DNA of 64,000 bases from Blepharisma stoltei ATCC 30299. Taxonomy: Eukaryota; Protista; Ciliophora. This document shows positions 40,311 through 62,558 of the stretch, one piece after another. The notes beneath the pieces were generated by a model. The model made no database searches and had not been told where the DNA came from. It saw only the letters and a list, made by a program, of their open reading frames with translations. Every line of letters starts with the position of its first letter. The first letter of the stretch is position 1. The stretch is taken from positions 682,001 through 746,000 of the forward strand of contig CBFDEM010000057.1 of the NCBI GenBank assembly GCA_965603825.1. Direction: 5' to 3'. The translations under genes and the position numbers were made by a program.

Positions 40311-42317
40311 ATGGAAAATAAAGAAGATTTCGCAGGGACGTTTTATAGTAATTTAAGATCGCTGATTACGCTTGTAGATCATTTAAGAGATGCAGGGCTT
40401 CAAAAATACATAAAACTGCCGAGAATAGTGACATTGGGACTTCAGAGCAGCGGGAAAAGCTCAGTTCTTGAGTCTATTGTAGGGCTGAATTTTTTGCCGA
40501 GAAGTGAAGGAGTTTGTACAAGGCGGCCGTTAGAGCTGAGGCTGGTCCACGAAGAAACCCAAACGCAGCCATGGGCCATTTTTGAAGGAAATTCGAATAA
40601 ATATACTGAGTTTGAAAAAGTCAGAGAACAGATTGAAAGGTTAACGGACGATAGAGCTGGAAGAAATAAAGGTATTGTAGACGACCCTATTATACTCACA
40701 ATCCACTCTTCTACTTGTCCGGATCTTACCTTAATCGATCTCCCAGGAATCACCAGAATTCCTTTAAAAAATAGCGATCAGCCTGCAGATATCGAAAGAA
40801 TTACTAAAGAAATGGCTTATAGGTACATCTCAGACCCAAGGACTATTATTTTGTGTGTAATTGCTGCCAATACTGATATCAGCACAAGTGAATCACTATT
40901 AATGGCAAATAAAGTTGATAAGGCTGGGATCAGAACTTTAGGGGTCATCACCAAAATTGATATCATGGACAGAGGCACAAACGCGAAAAAAGTGATTATG
41001 GGACAAGAAGTCACATTAAGACTAGGCTTTATAGGTGTAAAAAACAGATCCCAAGAAGACATTAACAATAACGTCAAAGTTGGTGCTGCTTTAAGAGAGG
41101 AGCAAGAATACTTTGCACAGCACCCTGTATATTCAACTATGCCGCCTGGATATCTCGGCACAGACGTCCTTACTCAGCGGCTAACCCAAATTTTATTTAA
41201 CCATATAAAACATTTTTTACCAGAAATTCTAAAAGAAACAATGTACAGGATCAAGGACTGTGATGAAAGATCAAAAGATCTTGGTCCAAGTACCCCAGTT
41301 GAGCCAAAACAAAAAACCCAAATGCTATGGAATATGATCACAGACTATTGTGAGACTTTTAAAAATACAATTAGAGGCAAATTCGAAAGGAGGGGGAACT
41401 CAAGAATTGCTAAAGACTTGGCTGGAGGGGTAACGATAAAACATTATTTTAATACCCTGCTAGAGGATTATTCTGGGAATTATAATGCTACAGAGGATTA
41501 TAGTAATGAAGAAATTCAAAGAATTATGGCCCAGCATGAAGGGGATAATATCCCTGGATTTCCATCTGTAGATGTCCTGCTGTTTTTATTGCATCCACAG
41601 CTGGAAAGGCTGAAAGGGCCTGTTTTGGACTGTTTAAATGACGTGCATTCCTATTTAGACCAGCTTTCGAGGAAAATTATTGAAAGGGTTTTTTATAGGT
41701 TTCCATCGTTGGTAGCAGAAATTGGGGATATTTCGTCTCATGTTTTAATTAAAGAAAGAGAAAACTGCAAGACTATTGTTGAGGAGCTGGTGGATGCTGA
41801 GGAAGGATATATTTTTACTAATGATGTGGAGTATTTAGCAAAAAGGACGGATTTGATACCGAAAAGTGATAATAAAGTCCCAAAAACCGCAGAAAGTCTA
41901 TTTGTGGACGAAATCAGGAGCAGAATTGATACTTATTTTAGAATTGTGGTAAGAAATGTAAGAGATACAGTGCCAAAGATCATTGGATATTTCTTAGTAA
42001 GATCAGTTATGGATAAAATGCAAATGCAGCTTTATGAAAGCATTAATAGAAGTGAAACAGTGCTAAATTTATTGAGTGAGCCTGCACATATTTCAACTGA
42101 AAGAGAAAACATCAGAAAGCAGCTTTCAACATTAAGAAAAGCAGAGAAAATCCTAAAGCATGACCCAAATCTTGCTTTGCAAGCAAATTCAATTGAAGAT
42201 GAAATCAGTAAGATTGAAAGCGAAGCGAGCGAAAGTGGGACTGCAAAGAAAAAGGCAGACGAAGACAGCACGATAGGCCAAAGGCCAAGCAAAACACCGC
42301 CGAAAGGAATCTTTTAA
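40311..42317 (+). CDS. dynamin-related protein (GTPase, stalk, GED)
   Basis: LPRIVTLGLQSSGKSS, CTRRPL, DLPG, TKID, GED YFRIVVRNVRDTVPKIIGYFLV. Confidence 0.93.
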   Translation: MENKEDFAGTFYSNLRSLITLVDHLRDAGLQKYIKLPRIVTLGLQSSGKSSVLESIVGLNFLPRSEGVCTRRPLELRLVHEETQTQPWAIFEGNSNKYTEFEKVREQIERLTDDRAGRNKGIVDDPIILTIHSSTCPDLTLIDLPGITRIPLKNSDQPADIERITKEMAYRYISDPRTIILCVIAANTDISTSESLLMANKVDKAGIRTLGVITKIDIMDRGTNAKKVIMGQEVTLRLGFIGVKNRSQEDINNNVKVGAALREEQEYFAQHPVYSTMPPGYLGTDVLTQRLTQILFNHIKHFLPEILKETMYRIKDCDERSKDLGPSTPVEPKQKTQMLWNMITDYCETFKNTIRGKFERRGNSRIAKDLAGGVTIKHYFNTLLEDYSGNYNATEDYSNEEIQRIMAQHEGDNIPGFPSVDVLLFLLHPQLERLKGPVLDCLNDVHSYLDQLSRKIIERVFYRFPSLVAEIGDISSHVLIKERENCKTIVEELVDAEEGYIFTNDVEYLAKRTDLIPKSDNKVPKTAESLFVDEIRSRIDTYFRIVVRNVRDTVPKIIGYFLVRSVMDKMQMQLYESINRSETVLNLLSEPAHISTERENIRKQLSTLRKAEKILKHDPNLALQANSIEDEISKIESEASESGTAKKKADEDSTIGQRPSKTPPKGIF

Positions 42318-42706
42318 TCTTAATCTTTTATAGGGAATAATTAAATAATAAACAGTTAAAAATTAAACTGAAATAAATTTTGAGGTAAATTTTTTTTTTG
42401 GTAGAATTTATTAGGTCCCGAACTAAACTAATAGATCTAAAATTTCTCTTTAAAAATTAATAGCTCTGAGCTAAAAAAGGTTTTAAAGATAGATACATTG
42501 CTCAAATTTCAATTTGGCATATTCAGCTCTTTCAGGCTATGTAATAAAATTAATATTCAGATTTTTTCCTAAAGGTAATTAAAAATTAATAATGATAGTC
42601 TGTTAGCTTAATTACATGTGCAGGTCTAGTCCATTTTAAAAATTCACAGATATTTGAAAAATTATTTCCACTTCAACAAAAGAGTCAATCCCTTGACTGT
42701 TGAAAA

Positions 42707-42802
42707 ATATCTATTCTGTTAATTTTCATCCAATTTATATCAGCTAAATTGAAAAAATATATCTATTCTGTTAATTTTCATCCAATTTATATCAGCTAAA
42801 TT
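42707..42802. repeat. direct repeat, 44-bp identical unit, 52-bp period
   Basis: ATATCTATTCTGTTAATTTTCATCCAATTTATATCAGCTAAATT at 42707-42750 and 42759-42802. Confidence 0.9.
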
Positions 42803-42909
42803 AAAAAAATAAAATTTTACACTTCAAAATCTACTGTTGAAAAAATCATTCATACCTAATTAAATCTATATTGACATTTTGAGATCAGTCTAATAAAAAT
42901 TGAAAAATA

Positions 42910-44343
42910 ATGGTCAGGTACTTTTTAGTTCTTACGCTGCTTTCGTTGAGCACTATGACTAGTTCAACTTTTTCTATTCCTTGTGATCTGGAAAATGATA
43001 AAAATCCTTCTAAGCCTTGCTCAAATATAAGTTCTTGGGATTATAAAAATTTCTCATATTCCAATGCTAATGAGGAATCAATCTTTCAAAACTCAAAAGC
43101 AAACCATCCTCATGAAAAATCAAAGAAAATGAAGATCGCGATAATCGGATGTCTTTTTATCGGACACATAACCCCAACAATTGACATGGCGAAATCCTTA
43201 ATATCAAGAGGCCATGAAATTATCTATTATGCTCCAATACAAGCTGAAAAGCTAATACAAGCGTCAGGGGCAAAATTCATCCCATACCCCAGCCCACAAA
43301 TTTCAAAGCTTAAACCTGTTGATAGTGTCAAACTGAAGCCAACTGAAATTGGCTTAATATTTGTAAACAAATTCGGCTCATTTACTGAGTTTATTATGCC
43401 ATGGTTTAAAGAGTCATTTGATAAAGAAAATTTTGATGCTGTCATCTTTAGCTCATTTACTGTCTGAGGAAATACCGTTACCAATTACTTCAAAAAGCCA
43501 TTTTTATGCTTTGAGCCTTCTATATTGCCAGCAGAAGACGAATTTTGGCTACAGACTCATTTCTATGATGATGGGAAAGAAGAGCAAACTAAATTTGCTG
43601 AAAAGCTTCACAATAAGTATGATTCTATTGGAAAAAATCTTGTAGAAATGCTATCATGCAGTTATGCAGAAAAAGTTCTAATGTTTTCTCCTCAAAAGTT
43701 TCTTGAAAAAACTATTTCATCAAAATTTCCCAATCCTGATAAATATATATTTTTAAACAGTGTTTCTTCTCAGACATCCAAAAACCCTATTCCTGAATTG
43801 AAAGAAAACAGTTTAATATATTTCTCATTAGGAACCATAATAAATCAAAGACTTGATATTTTTGGCTCAATTATAGAATTCTTCTGCAATACAGGATATA
43901 AGCTAAAAATCAGCTGTGGAGGAAATGAAAATCTTTATCAAGAAATTATTTCTAAATATCATTATGATAACATCGAAATTAATTTCTTTGCAAGCCAGCT
44001 TGATATCCTCCAAGAAGCCACGATTTTTATTACTCATTCAGGGCTCAATAGTGTAAGAGAAGCAGTTTCTAATACGGTCCCAATGATTACTATTCCTCAG
44101 GGTGCCGATCAGTTCGAAATATCCAGAAGTGTCACTGAGCTTGGACTAGGTGTCTCATTTGAAGATTATGAAGGAAGCTTAGACGATAAAATCAAACTTG
44201 CTTTTAATGAGATTGAAAGCAATTTTACAAAATATAAAGAAAATCTAAAAAGGGCTCAAAAGTCGTATTTCGATGAGCCAGCTTATAAAGATTCCATATC
44301 AGAAGTGGAAAATTATTTACTTAATATAACTCATAAGCTTTAA
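42910..44343 (+). CDS. UDP-glycosyltransferase, GT1/MGT (OleD/YjiC-like) with signal peptide (copy A1)
   Basis: MVRYFLVLTLLSLS signal; IGHITPT, LISRGHEI, IYFSLGT, FITHSGLNSVREA, IPQGADQF; TGA=Trp at 43465. Confidence 0.88.
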
Positions 44344-44366
44344 TTTATTTCCAAAAATTTATAAAA

Positions 44367-44861
44367 ATGTGGATATATCTATTAGGGATTTTATCAAATT
44401 ATTTAATAGCTTGAGGTTATGAAGAAGCAATAGGAAATCAACACAGTTGCAAAGTAATTAATGAATTTGTGAATAAAAAAAATCGATTTCAGTGCAGTTT
44501 AGATGAATATGATATATTTTCTGAAGCTTTAAATAAAGCAGCCACCAAAAGGAAAATTGGAATAATTGGATGTTTTGGCACTGATCACGTTATTCCTACA
44601 ATAGATGTAGCTAAATGGCTTACATTAAGAGGCCATGACGTTGTATTTTACGGTTCATTACACATTCAAGAAAAAAATTGAACTCTCAGGAGCAAAATTC
44701 GTCCCATACCCAGAAGAATTTTTCACATTTTAAAAAGATGAAATGAAACAAAAATTGTGGCATGCGGCGCAATTGTTACAGTTGACTAATTTATTAATGA
44801 TAATAATATACTTTGATTTTTAGGACTATTTTTCATCATTTTGCAATATTTAGGTTTGCTG
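44367..44861 (+). pseudogene. 5' fragment of a type-B glycosyltransferase, frameshifted and fused to a dynamin fragment
   Basis: Near-identical to 47695 onward up to ~44670; then a +1 frameshift, stops and small deletions; homology ends at ~44861. Confidence 0.88.
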
Positions 44862-45580
44862 TTGGCTGTAGGGGAAAACAAATAACCATTATTTTAATAC
44901 GTTTTTAGAGGATTATTCTGGGAACTATAATGCTACAGAGGATTACAATAATGAAGAAATTCAAAAAATTATGGTCCAGCATAAAGCGGATTATATTCCT
45001 GGATTTCCATCAGCAAATGTCTTGCTGTTTTTGCTGCATCAACAGCTGGAAAGGCTAAAAGGGCTTTTGACATTTTAAATGGGATGCATTCCTATTTAGA
45101 CAAGCTTTATCGGAATATTTAGTATTTTGCACAAAGAACGGATTCGATACCGAAAAGTGATAATAAAGTCCTAAAAACCGCAGAAAGTCTATTTGTGGAC
45201 GAAATCAGAAGTAGAATTGATACTTATTTTAGAATTGTGGTAAGAAATGTAAGAGATACAGTTCCAAAGACATTGGCTATTTCTTATGGATAAAATGCAA
45301 ATGAAGCTTTATGAAAGCATTAATAGAAGTGAAACAGTGCTAAATTTATTGAGCGAGCCTGCTGAAATAGAAAACATCAGAAAGCAGCTTTCAACATTAA
45401 GAAAAGCAGAGAAAATCCTAAAGCAGACCAAAATCTTGCTTTTCAAGCAATTTCAATTGAAGATGAAAATAGTAAGATTGAAAGCGAAGCGAGCGGAAGT
45501 GGGACTGCAAAAAAAAGGCAGACAAAGATAGCATGATAGGTCAAAGGCCAAGCAAAACATCGCCGGAAGGAATCTTTTAA
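44862..45580 (+). pseudogene. decayed 3' half of the dynamin gene (copy of 41418-42317)
   Basis: Aligns to dynamin from TTGGCTG (41418) to GGAATCTTTTAA; deletions of ~145, 13 and 12 bp plus frameshifts. Confidence 0.9.
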
Positions 45581-46237
45581 TTATAATCTTTTATAGGGAA
45601 CAATTAATTAATAAACAGTTAAGAATTAACTGAGTGGTGGTTAACAAATTTTGAGTTAAAATTTCAAAAATTGTAAATGGTGCTTCTGGTGAATTATTAA
45701 AAAATGCTTTTGGTTTTTTATAAATGGTGTTTTGGTAAAAACTCAAGGTCGCGAGCTAAACTAATCAAATAAAATTTCTCGTTTGAATTTTATAGATTGT
45801 AGTAAAACAATTTCAAATTTAGATTCATTGCTCAAATTTTAATTTGAATATTCATTTTTTCAATTTCTGTTATAAAATTAATATTCAGATTTTATCTAAA
45901 TAAATCAAAATTAATAAAGGTAATCTGCCAGCTTTAATATATGTACAGGTCTGGCCTGTTTTAAAGCTTCACTGCTATTTGAGAAATTATTTCTAACTTC
46001 AATCAAAGAACCACCTATATCCTGGTTTTCAATAAAATTTTTTCTGTTAATTTTTATGCAATTTAAATCTGCTCTAGCAAGTATTAACACTTTAAATCGG
46101 CTATAAATAATTCTAGTAAGCTTTAACACTTTTTAAATTGAAAAATAAAATTTTAAACACTAAACTCCATTCCCGAAACACCATATTTCTTCCTATTTAA
46201 ATCTGCTTGAAATTTTGAAAGTTATATAATAAAATTA

Positions 46238-47671
46238 ATGGTGAAAAGTCTTTTAATTTTTACGTTGCTTTCGTTGAGCATTATGACTACATCAGCTTGT
46301 TCTATTCTTCATGAGCTAGAAGATGATAAAACTACTTCTAATCCTTGTCCAAAAGCAAGTTCCTGGGATCATGAAAACTTAGCATATTCTAATGCTAATG
46401 AAGAATCAGTCTTTCACAATTCAAAAGCCAACCATACTCAAGAAAATCCAAAGAAAATGAAGATAGTGATAATAGGATCTCTTTTTATGGGCCACATAAC
46501 CCCAACAATTGACATGACAAAATCGTTAATATCAAGAGGCCATGAAATTACCTATTATGCTCCAATACAATCAGAAAAGCTATTACAAGCGTCAGGGGCG
46601 AAATTCATCCCATACCCCAACCTAGAAATATCAAGGCATAGTACTGTTGATGGTACAAAAGTGAAGATAACTCAAATTGGCTTACAGCTTATGCACATAC
46701 TCGGTTCGTTTACTGACTTTATTATGCCATGGTTTAAAGAGATGCTAGATAAAGAAAGTTTTGATGCTATCATCTTTAGCTCATTTACTATATGAGGAAA
46801 TACCGTTACCAATTACTTGAAAAAGCCATTTTTATGCTTTGAGCCTTCTATATTTCCAGCAGAAACCGAATTTAGGCTACAGACTCATTTTTTCGATGAT
46901 GGGAAAGAAGAGCAAGCTAAATTTGCTGAAAAGCTTCACGATGAGTATAATTCCAATGGAAAAAATCTTGTAGAAATGCTATCATGCAGTTATGCAGAAA
47001 AGATTTTAATGTTTTCTCCTCAAAAGTTTCTTGAGAAAACTGTTTCATCAAAATTTCCCAACCCTAATAAATATATTTTTTTACACAGTATTTCTTCCCA
47101 GACATCCAAAAACCCTATTCCTGAATTGAAAGAAAACAGCTTAATATATTTCTCATTAGGAACTCTACTAAATGAAAGGCTCGATATTTTTGGCTCAATT
47201 ATAGAATTCTTCTGTAGTACAAAATATAAGCTAATAATTAGCAGCGGAGGAAATGAAAATCTTTATCAAGAAATTACTTCTAAATATCACTGTGATAACA
47301 TTGAAGTTAAGTTATTTACAAGCCAGCTAGAAGTTCTCCAAGAAGCCGCAATTTTCATTTCTCATTCAGGGCTCAATAGTGTAAGAGAAGCAGTTTCTAA
47401 TACGGTCCCAATGATTACTATTCCTCAGGGTGCCGATCAGTTCGTAATAGCCAGAAGTGTCACTGAGCTTGGACTAGGCGTTTCATTTGAAGATTATGAA
47501 GGAAGCTTAGACGATAAAATCAAACTTGCTTTTAATGAGATTGAAAGCAATTTTACAAAATATAAAGAAAATCTAAAAAGGGTTCAAAAGACACATTTCG
47601 ATGGGCAAGTTTATGAAGATTCCATGTTAGAAGTGGAAAATTATTTGCTTAATATAACTCATAAGCTTTAA
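46238..47671 (+). CDS. UDP-glycosyltransferase, GT1/MGT-like with signal peptide (copy A2)
   Basis: Paralog of A1; MGHITPT, FISHSGLNSVREA, PQGADQF; TGA=Trp at 46793. Confidence 0.88.
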
Positions 47672-47694
47672 TTTATTTCCAAAAATTTATAAAA

Positions 47695-49110
47695 ATGTGG
47701 ATATATCTATTAGGGATTTTATCAAATTATTTAATAGCTTGAGGTTATGAAGAAGCAATAGGAAATCAACACAGTTGTGAAATAATTAATGAATTTGTGA
47801 ATAAAAAAGATCAATTTCAGTGCAGTTTAGATGAATATGATATATTTTCTGAAGCTTTAAATAAAGCAGCCACCAAAAGGAAAATTGGAATAATTGGATG
47901 TTTTGGCACTGATCACGTTATTCCTACAATAGATATAGCTAAATGGCTTGTATTAAGAGGCCATGACGTTGTATTTTACGGTCCATTACACATGCAAAAA
48001 AAAATTGAACTCTCAGGAGCAAAATTCGTCCCATACCCAGAACAAAATATAACATTTAAAAATAATCGTGAAAAGGAGGAAATGGAGCAAAAAATTATAG
48101 CATACGGCGCAATTGTTAAAGTTGATTACTTTATCAATAATAATCTACCTTGATTTTTAGAGAGCTGTGAAAAAGAAAATTTCGATGGGATTATTTTTCA
48201 TCATTTTGCAATATTTGGGTTTGCTGTAGCTAAATACTTAAATCTGCCAAACCTCTGCTTAACTTGTGGAGCTGTGCCGCCTGAAAGAGAAAAAATCGGG
48301 GATGATTATCCTAAAAATTGGAAAAAAAGAAAAATCGATTTTTCAGCTGAAGTCCAGAAGCAAGTTCCTTATATTGGGGAAATATCGAAAAAAGTCCATT
48401 CATGCAGCAATGTTGGCAAAGTTTTAATGGTGACTCCTAAAAAATTTGTCGAAGCAATTGCGAATCGAACTATTAAAGAGTCTTATCGATATATACATTT
48501 AAGCTCAATTATGTCAAAAAATTCTCATGATTATGTACCAGAACTGAAAGAAAATAGCTTGATTTATTTTGCATTTGGAACAATTTTTACTCGGTATAGC
48601 CAAGATATATATGATTCTGTCGCTAAATTTTTTTGTGGAACTAAATATGAACTTATTATGACAACAGGAGGAAATGAAGAACTTTATCAATATTTGTTGC
48701 CAAAATATAGCAACTGTAGCAATATAAGTATTAATTTATATGTAAATCAGATGGAGGTTCTTAGAAGAACAGCGATTTTTATAAATCATGCAGGGTTTAA
48801 TAGTGTTCAGGAAGCAATTCCACTTATAATTCCAATGATAGTAATCCCACAAGGAGCTGATCAGTATGCTATTGCCAGATGCATACACAGTTTAAAAATT
48901 GGAATTAATTTTAGGGATTTAAAATGAACTATTACCCAAAACTTGAGGTATGCTCTTAATGAAATAGAAAAAAACTTTACTAATTATAAAGAAAATATAA
49001 AGAAAGTACTTAAAACGCATTTTGATGGTGAAAAGCTTGAAGATTCTATCATAAAAGTTGAAAATTATTTGTTTAATTCAACAAGAATTAATAAAAAACT
49101 CATGTTTTAG
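47695..49110 (+). CDS. UDP-glycosyltransferase, GT1/MGT-like with signal peptide (type B)
   Basis: ATG 47695 (MWIYLLGILSNYLIAWG); GTDHVIPT, IYFAFGT, FINHAGFNSVQEA, PQGADQY; three TGA=Trp; stop TAG 49108-49110. Confidence 0.85.
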
Positions 49111-49171
49111 CTATTTAATTGATAAATTTTTTTTGGAAAAAAATTCTAATTGATTAGTCAACTGCTTTTAA

Positions 49172-49640
49172 ATTCGGGTGTATTCAGCTGCGCCATAAAT
49201 GGGTTTAAGCTTTATTTAAGGGCATAGGAGATATTTTTGGTAGATTTCGCCAGGATCTGAAAGAGTTTAATATTTATTGATCTAGTTGGAGGGGATATGC
49301 CAAGCTCTTGTGAGGTAACTTTTTCCCAGAGAGCAGGCATAGATTTTTGGTAAAAAGAATATAAACTTCCTGTTCTAAGCATATAGAATGCTTGTTTTGT
49401 TATCGTCCGCAGCCTTATATTGCTATTATCCTATATATGCGTTACATTGAAGCAAAGCCATAAGTTGGGCAGCCCAATGGTGTAGAGATCCCAAAATAAT
49501 GACTTAGTATCTATTAGGTTATTTATTTCAAGTAATTCCAAGAGATGAGGATAAATTTCCATGTTTTGATTATTTAAATGAGCAATGAAACGCTATAGAT
49601 TTTAATAGGCGCTAGCTATGATATCGTAATGCTTTATATA
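49172..49640 (-). pseudogene. inverted, internally deleted relic of the USP gene at 60432-62558
   Basis: Reverse complement matches ~60350-60647 (upstream region, ATG at 49562, retained intron GTAACGCATATATAG at 49431-49445) joined to 61826-62044. Confidence 0.88.
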
Positions 49641-50501
49641 AAAAGCACTTAAAAAATACTGAAAAAAGCTTAGAATATAAGAAAACTAAAAAAATTATTT
49701 TGATGTTTCAAGCTTGATGAGAATTTAATGGAGTTATAAAATTACTTATTCAATATTGTGAATAAATAATGAATAAAGTTAGCTCTCTTTTAAATTTAAG
49801 TCCATATAAGCCTGTGATATTACTAAAACTAGTCCTTGCAAGGCACAATAATACTTGTCCAAATTTCCAAAATAATTATAAGCACTTAAAATTCAAATAT
49901 GTTATACAATTAGATAGGCTAATGGTCTGATTTATTTTAAATTTTATTAGACAAATTTTTTGTATATTTCTAAAACAGGATTAAAGTCAGTTACATTATT
50001 TTAGCATTTTACTTTTAGCATTTAATTATAAATACAAAATTATTCCGAAACTTTTGGTATTTTTTATTTGCAAGTCGTTAAATTAGATGGTGAAATTTTA
50101 GTTAAAGGAATATTATAAAGACTTTTAGCAAGCTGAGCCAGCGAAAAAAGTTTTATTTCGAGATAAATTTATATATGAATAAGATTTAATTAAAATTTTA
50201 CTTTCAACACTAATAATTAACGATATAATAAAAATAATTTTTGGTTTGATCATACACTAATACTTGATAGTAAAATTCTTAATTTAAAATTCATCAACTC
50301 TAAACTAAGATTAGCCTTTTAATGCTTTTAAAAAAGAAATAATTATTTTGCATTTATTTATTATGAGTAACCTTGATCCATTATCAAATAACAAATTTTT
50401 GACCAACATTTAATTTTTTAATGCATGAAATTTTTAAATTAAAATCCTACTCTGTTTTTCGGTTTTTAGAGCCATTTCAAGTACTGGCAAAGATATAAAA
50501 C

Positions 50502-51941
50502 ATGGAAAAACTTAGCAAAAGTTTACTATTTTTTATACTTACTTTCAGTTATTTTTTCGCTGTCGCAGATGCCAGCATTAAGACTATAAAAAAAGCTAAT
50601 ACTCCAGTCTATTGTGAGCTGTCAATGCTGGATGAGTCTTCCCATGAGGATAGTTTTCGATCAAAGAATATTCCAGAAAAATCTTTACCACAAAGAGCTG
50701 AACAAAACAACAGCACTGGAAGGAAATTAAAGATCGCTATCATAGGCTGTATTGCTGTTGGTCATATAACCCCAACAATCGATATGATAAGAGCTTTAAA
50801 ATCAAAAGGTCATGATGTCGTTTTTTACGCACCCATTTATACTCAAAATTTAATAGAGTCAACCGGAGCGAAATTTATCCCATATCCAGAACAAAAGCAA
50901 GCTAAAATTACACCAATTGATAGAAAAGAGATTAGGGTCAATGAAACTGGATTGCAACTTATGTCGATTTTTGGTGGCTACACAGATTATATAATGCCAT
51001 GGTTTTTAGAAAATTTTGAAAAAGAGCAATTTGATGCTGTTATTTATAGCTCCCTTACTATTTGGGGCAATGCTGTAGCAAGCTATTTCAAAATTCCATA
51101 TTTATGCCTTGGAATTTCAGTTCTGCCAGCAGAGGACAATGCTTGGAATCAAACCCATTTTTACGATGAAGGAAAAGAGCAGCAGCTAGAATTTGCAAAT
51201 AGGCTTCATAATCAATATAATACTACAGCAGTTAATTTGATAGAAATGTTTTCGTGCAGTTATGCGAAAAAAGTATTGATGTTTTCTTCACAAAAATTCT
51301 TAGAAGCAGCATCAAATTACAGGTTTTCAGAGCCAGAAAAATATTTTTTTTTGAATTCCATTTCTTCTCAAACATCAAAAAATTTTATTTCTAAATTAAA
51401 AGAAAACAGTATTATATACCTATCACTTGGAACAGCTTTTAATCAACGCCCAGACATTTTTGAATCTATAATAACCTATTTCAACCAAACCAAATATGAG
51501 CTGATTGTAAGCACTGGGATGAATGAAAACCTCTATCAAGCTCTTACGTCTAAATATAACAGCAGCAATATAAAAATTAATTTATACACCAATCAGGTAA
51601 GGCTGCTTAAAGATGTAGCTATTTTTATAACCCATGCTGGGCTTAATAGCATAAAAGAAGCAATTTCTTTTACAATACCAACAGTTGCAATTCCTCAAGG
51701 GGCTGATCAATTTTGAATTTCAAAAGCTATTACAGATCTTAAAATTGGAGCTTCAGTTGAAGATTATGAAGGTAGCTTAGATAATAAGTTTAAAGCTGCG
51801 TTTCAGGAGATTGAACAGAACTTTGAGACTTATAAAGAAAATCTGAAGAATGTTCAAAAAAATTATTTTGATGGCCCAAGTTTTGATGAGTCTATTATGG
51901 ATTTAGAAAACTATTTATTAGATATAACGGATAAGCAATAA
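50502..51941 (+). CDS. UDP-glycosyltransferase, GT1/MGT-like with signal peptide (copy C1)
   Basis: MEKLSKSLLFFILTFSYFFAVADA signal; VGHITPT, IYLSLGT, FITHAGLNSIKEA, PQGADQF-W; stop TAA 51939-51941. Confidence 0.88.
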
Positions 51942-52534
51942 TAGACTTATCATTAATTATTAGCAATATTATGCATATTTATAAAATCATCAAACATTAT
52001 AGATTTCATATTTCAATATATAAATATATAAATATTTAGCATTTATTTATTTAATTATCGACAAATATAATAAATTTAGATGCATTAATAAGATTAAAAT
52101 TATTTAGAGAATATTAAAAAGACTTTAGCAAACTGAGCTAGCGAAAAATGTTTTATTTCGAGAAAAATTTATTTATCAACTCGAATTGGATCTAATTAAA
52201 ATTTGCTTCCAGCATTGGTAATTAACCTTTAATAAAAATAAAATAGTAAATTTCTTAATTTAAAATTTATCAAATCTTAACTCAGCTGAGCCTTTTGATC
52301 GTCTCATTTATAGTAAACTATATCGATATTTAAAGCAAAGGCACAAAAATACTTAAAACTTCAATAATTAATTGAATACCTTTTAATAAAGAATTAATTA
52401 TTTTCCTTTATATTTTATCAGCAATCTAATCCATTTTTAAATAAAATTTTGAATAGCATTTAATTTTTAATGCATGGTTATTTTTAACATATAGTCTCTT
52501 AAAGCTATTTTAGGTACTGATAAGTATATAAAAC

Positions 52535-53956
52535 ATGGAAAAGCTTGCTAAAAGTTTACTATTCTTTATACTTACTGCCAGTTATTTTTTCGCAGTTGCA
52601 GATGCCAGCACTGAGACTCTAAAAGCTGACACTCCAGTCTATTGTGAGCCGTCAATGCTGCATGAGTCTTCCCATGAGGATAGTTTGCGATCAAAAAATA
52701 TTTCAGAAAGAGCTGAACAAAACAACAGCACTGGAAGGAAATTAAAGATCGCTATCATAGGCTGTATTGCTATTGGTCATATAACCCCAACAATCGATAT
52801 GACAAGAGCTTTAAAATCAAAAGGTCACGATGTCGTCTATTACGCGCCCATTTATACTCAGAATTTAATAGAGTCTACTGGAGCGAAATTTATCCCATAT
52901 CCAGAGCAAAAGCTAGCTAAAGTTACACCTCTTGATAAAAAAGAGATTCGGGTCAATGAAACTGGATTGCTACTTATAGCGGCGTTTGGTGGTTACACAG
53001 ATTATATAATGCCATGGTTTTTAGAAAATTTCGAAAAAGAACAATTTGATGCTGTTATTTATACCTCCTTTGCTATTTGGGGCAATGCTGTAGCAAGCTA
53101 TTTCAAAATTCCATATTTATGCCTTGGGACTAGCGTACTGCCAGCAGAGGACAATGCTTGAAATGAAACCCATTTTTACGATGAAGGAAAAGAGCAGCAG
53201 CTAGAATTTACAAATAGGCTTCATAATAAATATAATACTACAGCAGTTAATTTGATAGAAATGTTTTCGTGCAGTTATGCGAAAAAAGTATTGATGGTTT
53301 CTTCACAAAAATTCTTAGAAGCAGCATCAGATCACAGGTTTTCAGAGCCAGAAAAATATTTTTTTTTGAGTTCCATTTCTTCTCAAACATCAAAAAATTT
53401 TATTTCTAAATTAAAAGAAAACAGTATTATATACCTATCACTTGGAACAACTTTTAATCAACGCCCAGACATTTTTGAATCTATCATGACCTATTTCAAC
53501 CAAACCAAATATGAGCTGATTGTGAGTGCTGGAATGAATGAAAAACTTTATCAAGCTCTTACGTCTAAAAATTACAGCAGCAATATAAAAATTAATTTAT
53601 ACACCAATCAGGTAAGGCTGCTTAAAGATGTAGCTATTTTTATAACCCATGCTGGGCTTAATAGCATAAAAGAAGCAATTTCTTTTACAATACCAACAGT
53701 TACAATTCCTCAAGGGGCTGACCAATTTTGAATTTCAAAAGCTATTAAAGATCTTAAAATTGGAGCTTCAGTTGAAGATTATGAAGGTAGCTTAGATGAT
53801 AAGTTTAAAGCTGCGTTTCAGGAGATTGAACAGAACTTTGAGACTTATAAAGAAAATCTGAAGAATGTTCAAAAAAATTATTTTGATGGCCCAAGTTTTG
53901 ATGAGTCTATTATGGATTTAGAAAACTATTTATTAGATATAACGGATAAGCAATAA
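52535..53956 (+). CDS. UDP-glycosyltransferase, GT1/MGT-like with signal peptide (copy C2)
   Basis: Close paralog of C1; two TGA=Trp; stop TAA 53954-53956. Confidence 0.88.
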
Positions 53957-54196
53957 TAGACTTATCATTAATTATTAGCAATATTATGCATATTTATAAA
54001 ATCATCAAACATTATAGATTTCATATTTCAATATATAAATTTTAGCTAATAATCTAGTCTATTTCTTAGGTAAAAATATTGATTATGAAGTCAATTATAA
54101 TAATTAGGCAAATTTATCTTGTTTAAACAACTAATATAAGAAAAAAATGCATTTAGGATAAATGAAAAGTTAAAAATTTTACTTACAAAATAAAAT

Positions 54197-60106: not shown

Positions 60107-60431
60107 TTTTATTGGTTTATTTAAGATATATTAGGTCACCACTATTATCAGAGCAATTTTTCTGAATGATGTTTTGTTGTGGGCAGATTATTTAGGAAAA
60201 TATATTTTATTCAACAGAGTAAAATATTTAAATATTTTAACTGATTTAAGGATCTATATAAAAACTAGGGTGATATAGCAAAATAGATCTAAATCGGGTG
60301 AAATTGGCTTGGTAATTTTTATTTCTGATTATAGAAAAGGATTAATAAGGTTATATAAATCATGGTGATGTCATAATTAACGCCTATTAAAAGTCTATAA
60401 CAATTTCATTGCTTGTTTAAATAATCAAAAC

Positions 60432-62558
<2,127 letters not shown>

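What the first reader, a model, noticed from the sequence alone, without database searches (positions are those of the whole stretch)
42910..53956. Tandem cluster of five bacterial MGT-type glycosyltransferases retargeted to the secretory pathway
Seen: five intact, apparently intronless GT-B genes (A1, A2, B, C1, C2) and one pseudogene. Each has a signal peptide, a Cys-containing linker, N-glycosylation sequons and no C-terminal membrane anchor. The core motifs (GHITPT, RGHxVxxY, IYxSLGT, FITHAGLNS, IPQxADQ) resemble cytosolic bacterial OleD/YjiC macrolide and phenolic glycosyltransferases. Known: MGT enzymes glycosylate antibiotics and polyphenols, and Blepharisma stores phototoxic polyphenolic blepharismins in extrusive granules. 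Inference: this may be a horizontally acquired, expanded luminal or secreted small-molecule glycosylation system for pigment tailoring, self-protection or detoxifying prey compounds in food vacuoles.
Basis: partly seen in the sequence, partly recalled or inferred. Interest (0 to 1): 0.8.

Follow-up and report, generated by a model that had tools for sequence, protein, structure and literature searches.

The report
Symbiont-derived secreted glycosyltransferases in Blepharisma
The pink ciliate Blepharisma carries six sugar-attaching enzymes that most likely came from bacteria living inside protists; they appear routed into its secretory system and have all lost a standard active-site acid, which hints that they sugar-coat acidic small molecules, but their real substrate is unknown.

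Summary
Confirmed. Read with TGA=Trp, 42910-53956 of this Blepharisma stoltei contig holds five intact GT1/GT-B genes and a pseudogene, built by tandem duplication; a sixth paralog lies on contig C14. The cores are under purifying selection (dN/dS 0.11-0.49 within the cluster). All six have a signal-like leader and no C-terminal anchor. Sequons are not enriched.

Three corrections. (1) They are not MGT/YjiC/OleD members: TIGR01426 scores are 110-149 against a cut-off of 260, and that grouping is rejected (AU p=0.033). They nest in a separate subfamily of AT-rich bacteria whose named members are Holosporales amoeba symbionts. (2) Ten of 37 kin in that subfamily already carry leaders (0 of 221 classical MGTs), so the ciliate need not have invented the retargeting. 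(3) New: all six keep the catalytic His and the UDP-glucose motifs but lack the dyad Asp (kept in 35/37 near kin). By PtUGT1/QsFucT precedent this points to pre-ionised acceptors (acidic phenols, carboxylates, thiols).

Best reading: luminal small-molecule glucosyltransferases for detoxification or storage. A blepharismin link has no direct support, and no expression data were obtained.

The parts
42910..44343 (+). GT gene A1, 477 aa (TGA=Trp): signal-like leader (~1-22), variable linker to ~73, GT-B core, no C-terminal anchor; catalytic His86 kept, dyad Asp replaced by Ser
   Evidence: P0003
44367..44862 (+). Pseudogene copy of B: 5' part only, frameshift, deletions, stop; 86.5% DNA identity to B
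44862..45664 (+). Decayed fragments of the upstream dynamin-related gene (copies of 41418-41678 and 41830-42393, 84-88% identity), carried along in the A+B segmental duplication
46238..47671 (+). GT gene A2, 477 aa; core 82% identical to A1; dyad Asp replaced by Ser
   Evidence: P0004
47695..49110 (+). GT gene B, 471 aa, most divergent in the cluster (41-43% core identity); starts 23 nt after the A2 stop; dyad Asp replaced by His; not returned by any public-protein search, so possibly unannotated
49172..49641 (-). Inverted decayed fragments of the locus at 60351-62044 (75-85% identity)
49688..49781 (+). Relic of the 3' end of a further C-type GT gene (75% identity to the C1/C2 ends)
50502..51941 (+). 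GT gene C1, 479 aa; His88, Ser183 at the dyad-Asp position, UDP-sugar motif H378-G380-N382-S383-E386 and D402-Q403
   Evidence: P0001
52535..53956 (+). GT gene C2, 473 aa; core 92% identical to C1; dyad Asp replaced by Thr
   Evidence: P0002
42413..48227 (+). Segmental tandem duplication: 42413-44862 matches 45746-48227 at 84% identity
50098..54040 (+). Tandem duplication of the C unit: 50098-52025 matches 52100-54040 at 87% identity
40311..42317 (+). Intact dynamin-family GTPase gene, a eukaryotic neighbour and source of the internal fragments; shows the cluster sits in host DNA

Best explanation
A single GT1 gene entered the Blepharisma lineage from a little-known subfamily of AT-rich bacteria associated with protists (named members: Holosporales). 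It adopted the host code and gave a dispersed copy (C14) and a birth-and-death tandem cluster. The proteins enter the ER by an N-terminal signal, have no anchor, and work as soluble luminal (ER, Golgi or granule) inverting glucosyltransferases using imported UDP-glucose. The dyad Asp was lost before the six paralogs diverged. They are therefore most likely tuned to acceptors that need little base catalysis (acidic polyphenols or quinones, carboxylates, thiols, possibly aryl amines). Conjugation would detoxify or package such compounds for storage or exocytosis. SHOWN: genes, fold, motifs, Asp loss, purifying selection, tree position, and host genes for luminal UDP-glucose use. INFERRED: direction of transfer and donor group (~0.8), secretory entry (~0.75), activity with UDP-glucose (~0.7), acidic acceptor class (~0.5). 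The identity of the acceptor is open.
For: Pfam UDPGT is above its cut-off. The AlphaFold model matches OleI, OleD and YojK best. In the careful tree the ciliate clade (100/99) lies inside a 24-row subfamily (96/95), with bacterial lineages branching first. Named kin are Ca. Paracaedibacter symbiosus and Ca. P. acanthamoebae, Holosporales. Kin sit on bacterial contigs with ankyrin, LRR, NRPS and IS genes. AU tests reject grouping with animal UGTs (p=0.044) and with YjiC/OleD types (p=0.033). Core dN/dS is 0.11-0.49 within the cluster, and leader dN/dS is 0.43-0.62 in the recent pairs. His, H-x-G-x-N-S-x-x-E and D-Q are kept while the dyad position reads S,S,H,S,T,S, against D in 35/37 near kin and D/E in 218/221 far kin; it aligns to YjiC Asp106 (dyad as in BcGT1, PMC8662728). 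PtUGT1 Asp122Asn is S-specific, and O-glycosylation needs the dyad (PMC8819650). Dyad-Asp variants of carboxylate-glycosylating GT1s stay active (PMC12728629). The genome has UGGT, UAA-family transporters and UDPGP.
Against: Signal peptides were judged by hydropathy only, and sequons are not enriched. Identity to the nearest kin is only 24-30%. The sister position (93/84) is not starred, both AU p-values are near 0.05, and eukaryotic outgroups were limited to two long animal UGT branches. The closest sister pair includes a leaderless, Asp-retaining protein from another eukaryote (P0027), so an older eukaryotic history is possible. The rule linking Asp loss to acceptor class comes from engineered plant enzymes.
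Confidence: 0.5

Rival explanations
1. The enzymes glucosylate Blepharisma's own metabolites: hypericin-like blepharismins or their precursors, or the carboxylate/phenol pheromone gamone 2. This would store them in a harmless form in cortical granules. It is a specific case of the best explanation.
For: The pigments are hypericin-like and sit in cortical granules, and gamone 2 is a hydroxybenzoyl-lactate (PMC9542385). Hypericin-type bay hydroxyls are strongly acidic (own knowledge), which fits Asp loss. These six are the only UDPGT/MGT-like genes found in the genome.
Against: The review text searched has no mention of glycosides. None of the eight strong ketosynthase hits is on this contig. 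No close homologue from the stentorin-making Stentor was recognised among the top hits (hits are unnamed, so this is weak).
Confidence: 0.15
2. The leader is an uncleaved type II signal anchor, so the proteins are membrane-tethered luminal enzymes with a ~50-residue stem like Golgi glycosyltransferases. Alternatively, shorter cytosolic forms start at an internal Met.
For: The layout hydrophobic segment, disordered linker (pLDDT under 50 for 13-71), catalytic domain is the usual type II layout. A1 and A2 have a Met directly before the core.
Against: The hydrophobic stretches are short (about 9-14 residues) and are followed by small-residue cleavage-like sites in C1/C2. B, C1, C2 and the C14 copy have no Met at the core start. 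The leader frame is open in all six.
Confidence: 0.15
3. Loss of the Asp marks a shift away from transfer: the proteins are secreted or food-vacuole binders of polyphenols and pigments, or act in reverse (deglucosylation, transglucosylation) where UDP-glucose is absent.
For: The dyad is broken in all six. There is no ER-retention signal, so the default route leads out of the cell or to vacuoles.
Against: Every UDP-sugar contact and the catalytic His are conserved across paralogs only 27-43% identical, and the donor-binding domain has the lower dN/dS in most pairs.
Confidence: 0.1
4. They glycosylate lipids (sterol, triterpenoid or ceramide), standing in for the sterol glucosyltransferase the genome seems to lack.
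For: No PF03033 hit in the genome. Luminal UGT8-type lipid glycosylation is known (own knowledge).
Against: Neutral alcohols need the full dyad (PMC8819650). There is no membrane anchor, and rapid birth-and-death turnover fits xenobiotic more than housekeeping roles.
Confidence: 0.05
5. The family is old in protists and the bacterial kin are symbionts that took it from their hosts, so there was no bacteria-to-ciliate transfer.
For: The named kin are intracellular symbionts. A second eukaryote carries a sister sequence (L024). The tree is rooted on two long branches only.
Against: The two eukaryotic lineages nest inside at least three bacterial lineages. Bacterial members lie in NRPS and fatty-acyl gene clusters. 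The whole subfamily adjoins thousands of MGT-like proteins, and no model ciliate protein was recognised among the near hits.
Confidence: 0.08

Closest known systems
Bacterial MGT/YjiC/YojK/OleD glycosyltransferases (TIGR01426, CAZy GT1)
   Same: GT-B fold, catalytic His, UDP-glucose signature, best HMM and structure matches.
   Different: Scores 110-149 bits against a cut-off of 260; separate clade (AU p=0.033); dyad Asp absent; 55-75 residue leader and linker; 24% identity or so.
Unnamed GT1 subfamily of protist-associated bacteria (Ca. Paracaedibacter WP_032113935.1 and metagenomic kin)
   Same: Same clade (96/95); a quarter of members have signal-like leaders; two (P0023, P0026) also lack the Asp.
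   Different: Bacterial leaders join the core almost directly, without the long linker; most keep the Asp; many lie in NRPS clusters; no function is described for them.
Spider-mite (Tetranychus) UGTs of bacterial origin
   Same: Bacterial GT1 transferred to a eukaryote and expanded for small-molecule conjugation (PMC10731231, PMC4943190).
   Different: TuUGT202A2 has neither signal peptide nor TM and keeps His25-Asp140. Whether the donor differs was not tested, since mite sequences were not in the tree.
Animal ER UGTs (UGT1/2, insect and nematode UGTs)
   Same: N-terminal signal and luminal catalysis with imported UDP-sugar: the way these proteins are proposed to work.
   Different: No C-terminal TM or retention signal; not in the same clade (AU p=0.044).
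Baculovirus ecdysteroid UDP-glucosyltransferase (EGT)
   Same: Soluble, signal-bearing, anchor-less GT1 acting on small molecules (own knowledge).
   Different: EGT derives from insect UGTs (own knowledge); not compared by sequence here.
Endosymbiont-derived Euplotes genes with added N-terminal signal or TM extensions
   Same: Ciliate genes from endosymbionts with 42-50 residue targeting extensions (PMC13071891).
   Different: Different ciliate class; that paper does not describe GT1/UGT proteins of this kind.

Membership tests
GT1 / GT-B UDP-glycosyltransferase | Pfam UDPGT above gathering score and two-Rossmann GT-B fold | tested here: met
   PF00201 30-38 bits vs 19.5; Foldseek prob 1.0 to OleI/OleD/YojK; Atlas TM 0.72
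GT1 / GT-B UDP-glycosyltransferase | Catalytic His after strand 1 | tested here: met
   His in all six, aligned to YjiC His16
GT1 / GT-B UDP-glycosyltransferase | Dyad Asp after strand 4 (widely but not universally conserved) | tested here: not met
   S,S,H,S,T,S in the six paralogs; aligned to YjiC Asp106
GT1 / GT-B UDP-glycosyltransferase | UDP-sugar signature Q...H-x-G-x-N-S-x-x-E...D/E-Q | tested here: met
   All kept; N to S in the C14 copy only
GT1 / GT-B UDP-glycosyltransferase | Sugar transfer from a UDP-sugar to a small molecule | not testable with these tools
   needs an enzyme assay
MGT subfamily (TIGR01426; YjiC/OleD) | HMM score of at least 260 bits | tested here: not met
   110-149 bits for full-length proteins; B 150
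MGT subfamily (TIGR01426; YjiC/OleD) | One clade with Bacillota/Actinomycetota MGTs | tested here: not met
   AU p=0.033, moderate strength
Macrolide-inactivating Mgt/OleI (NF033129, NF000362) | HMM score of at least 700 bits | tested here: not met
   42-83 bits
Animal-type ER UGT | N-terminal signal peptide | tested here: inconclusive
   hydropathy heuristic positive in 6/6; no SignalP available
Animal-type ER UGT | C-terminal TM helix and retention motif | tested here: not met
   no hydrophobic C-terminal segment
Animal-type ER UGT | One clade with animal UGTs | tested here: not met
   AU p=0.044 with two long-branch animal rows; marginal
Sterol glucosyltransferase (UGT80/Atg26) | PF03033 N-terminal domain | tested here: not met
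   no hit in these proteins or in the genome
Holosporales-associated GT1 subfamily | Nesting in the supported clade with Ca. Paracaedibacter protein | tested here: met
   96/95 support; 94 and 97 in quick trees
Baculovirus EGT | Sequence clade with EGT and insect UGTs | not tested
   no EGT sequence was returned by any tool

The most novel reading that the evidence does not exclude
Blepharisma turned a symbiont-derived, already secreted GT1 into a dyad-less luminal enzyme family that glucosylates its own acidic phototoxic pigments or gamone 2 for safe storage in extrusive granules. These would be the first tailoring enzymes for a ciliate defence pigment, and natural examples of GT1s selective for pre-ionised acceptors.
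Probability: 0.15. Interest if true: 0.82.

Novelty: new variant of a known kind. Interest (0 to 1): 0.52.

Why it matters
Bacteria-to-eukaryote transfer of GT1 enzymes is known from spider mites, and leader-bearing symbiont genes are known from Euplotes, so the broad pattern is not new. Three things were not found described in the searched library: a soluble, signal-bearing GT1 family in a ciliate; its origin in an uncharacterised subfamily of protist-symbiont bacteria, a quarter of which carry leaders themselves; and the shared loss of the dyad Asp. The last gives a sharp biochemical prediction and six natural enzymes for S-, N- or ester-selective glycosylation. The family also offers a short RNAi list for ciliate pigment and xenobiotic chemistry, where I found no tailoring enzyme described.

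Tried and rejected
Contamination rejected: the genes use TGA=Trp, have host-like GC3 (0.21-0.28 against 0.28-0.37 in neighbours), lie on a 1.1 Mb host contig, and are interleaved with copies of host dynamin DNA. Sequons as evidence of secretion: rejected, not enriched. Lack of introns as evidence of transfer: rejected (PMC10946202). A biosynthetic gene cluster: no ketosynthase nearby. Viral origin: only 4 distant viral hits, outside the subfamily in the tree. A sample of 401 genomes of the class of one alphaproteobacterial MAG had no match at 1e-45, with no positive control. Gene B could be searched only in pieces because of its TGA codons. One mis-extracted row (L179) and long-branch rows were removed before the careful tree.
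Full report
ORGANISM AND OBSERVATION. The window is G000:C57:682001-746000 of a 41.5 Mb, 64-contig assembly. A paralog from the same assembly is named Blepharisma stoltei in NCBI. With table 11 the region breaks into fragments. With TGA=Trp it gives five complete + strand ORFs: A1 42910-44343, A2 46238-47671, B 47695-49110, C1 50502-51941 and C2 52535-53956 (471-479 aa), plus a broken copy of B at 44367-~44862. Three of eight in-frame TGAs fall on columns where most or all paralogs have Trp. A sixth intact paralog (453 aa, 27-35% core identity, also with a leader) lies on contig C14. Genome scans with TIGR01426 and PF00201 find only these six, and PF03033 finds none.

HISTORY OF THE LOCUS. Self-comparison shows two tandem duplications: 42413-44862 with 45746-48227 (84%) and 50098-52025 with 52100-54040 (87%). 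The first dragged along pieces of the upstream dynamin gene (44862-45664). A relic of another C-type gene end lies at 49688-49781, and inverted pieces of the 60351-62044 locus at 49172-49641. This is a birth-and-death array in host DNA. Core dN/dS is 0.49 (A1/A2), 0.39 (C1/C2) and 0.11-0.30 between subfamilies, where dS is near saturation. The leaders of recent pairs give 0.62 and 0.43, so they look coding. GC3 of 0.21-0.28 is at or slightly below that of neighbours. Contamination is excluded.

WHAT THE PROTEINS ARE. Pfam UDPGT and Glyco_tran_28_C pass their cut-offs. The best NCBIfam model is MGT TIGR01426, but at 110-149 bits against 260. The best solved relatives are Bacillus YojK and YjiC. 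The AlphaFold model (pLDDT 72, residues 13-71 low confidence) matches OleI, OleD, YojK and CalG2. So they are GT1/GT-B enzymes that resemble MGTs without meeting the family threshold.

ORIGIN. A profile search of 1.84 billion representatives returned a set of nearest kin at E 1e-69 to about 1e-40, ahead of the bulk of classical MGTs. In a 39-row LG+C20 tree the ciliate proteins form one clade (100/99) inside a 24-row subfamily (96/95), apart from Bacillota, Actinomycetota, Chloroflexota and Bacteroidota MGTs (same shape). Forcing them with animal UGTs gives AU p=0.044. Forcing them with classical MGTs gives p=0.033. Both are moderate rejections. The only species-level names in the subfamily are Ca. 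Paracaedibacter symbiosus and Ca. P. acanthamoebae (Holosporales); others are labelled Alphaproteobacteria or Proteobacteria MAGs. Contigs of 27-36% GC carry ankyrin, LRR, FG-GAP and IS genes, or NRPS and acyl-transfer clusters. That the unnamed ones are protist symbionts is my inference. The immediate sister (93/84, not starred) is a pair. P0020 lies on a 2 kb contig beside an IS integrase remnant. P0027 lies on a contig that is eukaryotic: an LSM gene, spacers of 18-22% GC, and two GT-AG introns of 44 and 53 nt that join a neighbouring ORF. P0027 has no leader and keeps the Asp. The subfamily therefore entered eukaryotes either twice, or once long ago with leader gain and Asp loss later in the Blepharisma line. 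No relative above about 30% identity exists in the searched sets, so the transfer is old or the family evolves fast.

TARGETING. All six begin with a hydrophobic stretch (9-residue mean 2.2-2.8), reached by 5 of 32 other window ORFs. A 35-55 residue polar linker follows, and there is no C-terminal TM or KDEL-type motif. The six leaders share only 8-28% identity between subfamilies yet all stay hydrophobic, as signal peptides do. Sequons are at chance level (30 against 25). Ten of 37 near kin, nearly all bacterial, have signal-like leaders in at least three sub-branches, against 0 of 221 classical MGTs. The leader may thus have come with the gene or been gained afresh; the nearest sisters lack it. 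A precedent for extensions on symbiont-derived ciliate genes exists in Euplotes (PMC13071891). A luminal donor is plausible: the genome encodes UGGT, UAA-family nucleotide-sugar transporters and UDP-glucose pyrophosphorylase. Food vacuoles and the medium would lack it (own knowledge), so catalysis inside the secretory pathway is the more coherent reading.

ACTIVE SITE. His88 (C1 numbering), Thr311, Gln365, His378, Gly380, Ser383, Glu386 and Asp402-Gln403 are invariant in the six. The terminal D-Q suggests a gluco-configured donor (established GT1 knowledge). The residue that aligns without gaps to YjiC Asp106 is Ser, Ser, His, Ser, Thr and Ser, against Asp in 35/37 near kin and Asp/Glu in 218/221 far kin. 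This Asp is the dyad partner in bacterial, mite and plant GT1s (PMC8662728, PMC10731231). In PtUGT1, O-glycosylation of a phenol needs the dyad, Asp122Asn is S-specific, and N- and S-transfer can go without proton transfer (PMC8819650). Carboxylate-glycosylating QsFucT and SvFucT tolerate Asp-to-Asn, and enzymes for low-pKa phenols tolerate loss of the dyad His (PMC12728629). I infer active enzymes for pre-ionised or weakly basic nucleophiles rather than OleD-like macrolide enzymes. A substitute acid in three dimensions could not be checked.

FUNCTION. The most likely role (0.5) is luminal glucosylation of acidic small molecules for detoxification or storage, by analogy with mite UGTs in origin and animal UGTs in location. 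Endogenous candidates exist: hypericin-like blepharismins in cortical granules, and gamone 2, a hydroxybenzoyl-lactate (PMC9542385). Nothing ties the genes to them: that review mentions no glycosides, and the genome's eight KAS-like ketosynthase hits lie on other contigs. I put that case at 0.15. Type II anchoring or cytosolic isoforms (0.15), binding or reverse action (0.1), host-to-symbiont direction (0.08) and lipid glycosylation (0.05) are the other rivals.

LIMITS. SignalP was unavailable. Outgroups were few and long-branched. Most kin are unnamed. Gene B was searched only in stop-free pieces and appears missing from the public protein set: at 41-43% identity it should have had its own representative. 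Paper searches found no description of these genes, but the library omits most subscription journals.

VERDICT. A real, selected, horizontally acquired gene family, and a new variant of a known kind. Interest 0.52.

Noticed in passing
L006:1396-2757 (G000:C14:109488-110849): Sixth paralog, 453 aa, single copy between unrelated host genes; also has a leader and lacks the dyad Asp; earliest branch of the ciliate clade.
   Followed up: yes
L024:1-2534: River-metagenome contig of an unidentified eukaryote (standard code, 44 and 53 nt introns, LSM gene) with a leaderless member of the same GT subfamily: a second eukaryotic carrier.
   Followed up: partly
P0022, P0023, P0026, P0030, P0039, P0040 (L025, L115, L117): A bacterial sister group whose GTs end in acidic '-EL/-DL' tails resembling ER-retention signals; P0026 also has a clear Sec-type leader. 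They may be host-directed effectors of intracellular bacteria.
   Followed up: partly
L021, L026, L030, L202: NRPS and acyl-transfer gene clusters (AurF, TauD, racemase, MbtH) with a GT of this subfamily in AT-rich, probably symbiotic bacteria; products unknown.
   Followed up: no
L020:1-2127: Top non-Blepharisma hit: a 30% GC GT gene between 46% GC flanks with an IS integrase remnant; looks recently mobile, host unknown.
   Followed up: partly
L203-L210 (contigs C2, C30, C41, C46, C52, C53, C64): Eight stand-alone KAS-II-like ketosynthase genes, several with altered catalytic His motifs; candidates for pigment polyketide synthesis, unlinked to the GT cluster.
   Followed up: partly
window 44344-44366 and 47672-47694: Only 23 nt separate the A stop from the B start in both repeats, leaving almost no room for a 3' UTR and promoter.
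   Followed up: no
window 44335-44343 and 47663-47671: A1 and A2 end in HKL, loosely like a peroxisomal PTS1; not shared by the other paralogs and probably incidental.
   Followed up: no
window 49172-49641: Inverted, internally deleted copy of the two ends of the 60351-62044 locus, inserted between B and C1.
   Followed up: partly
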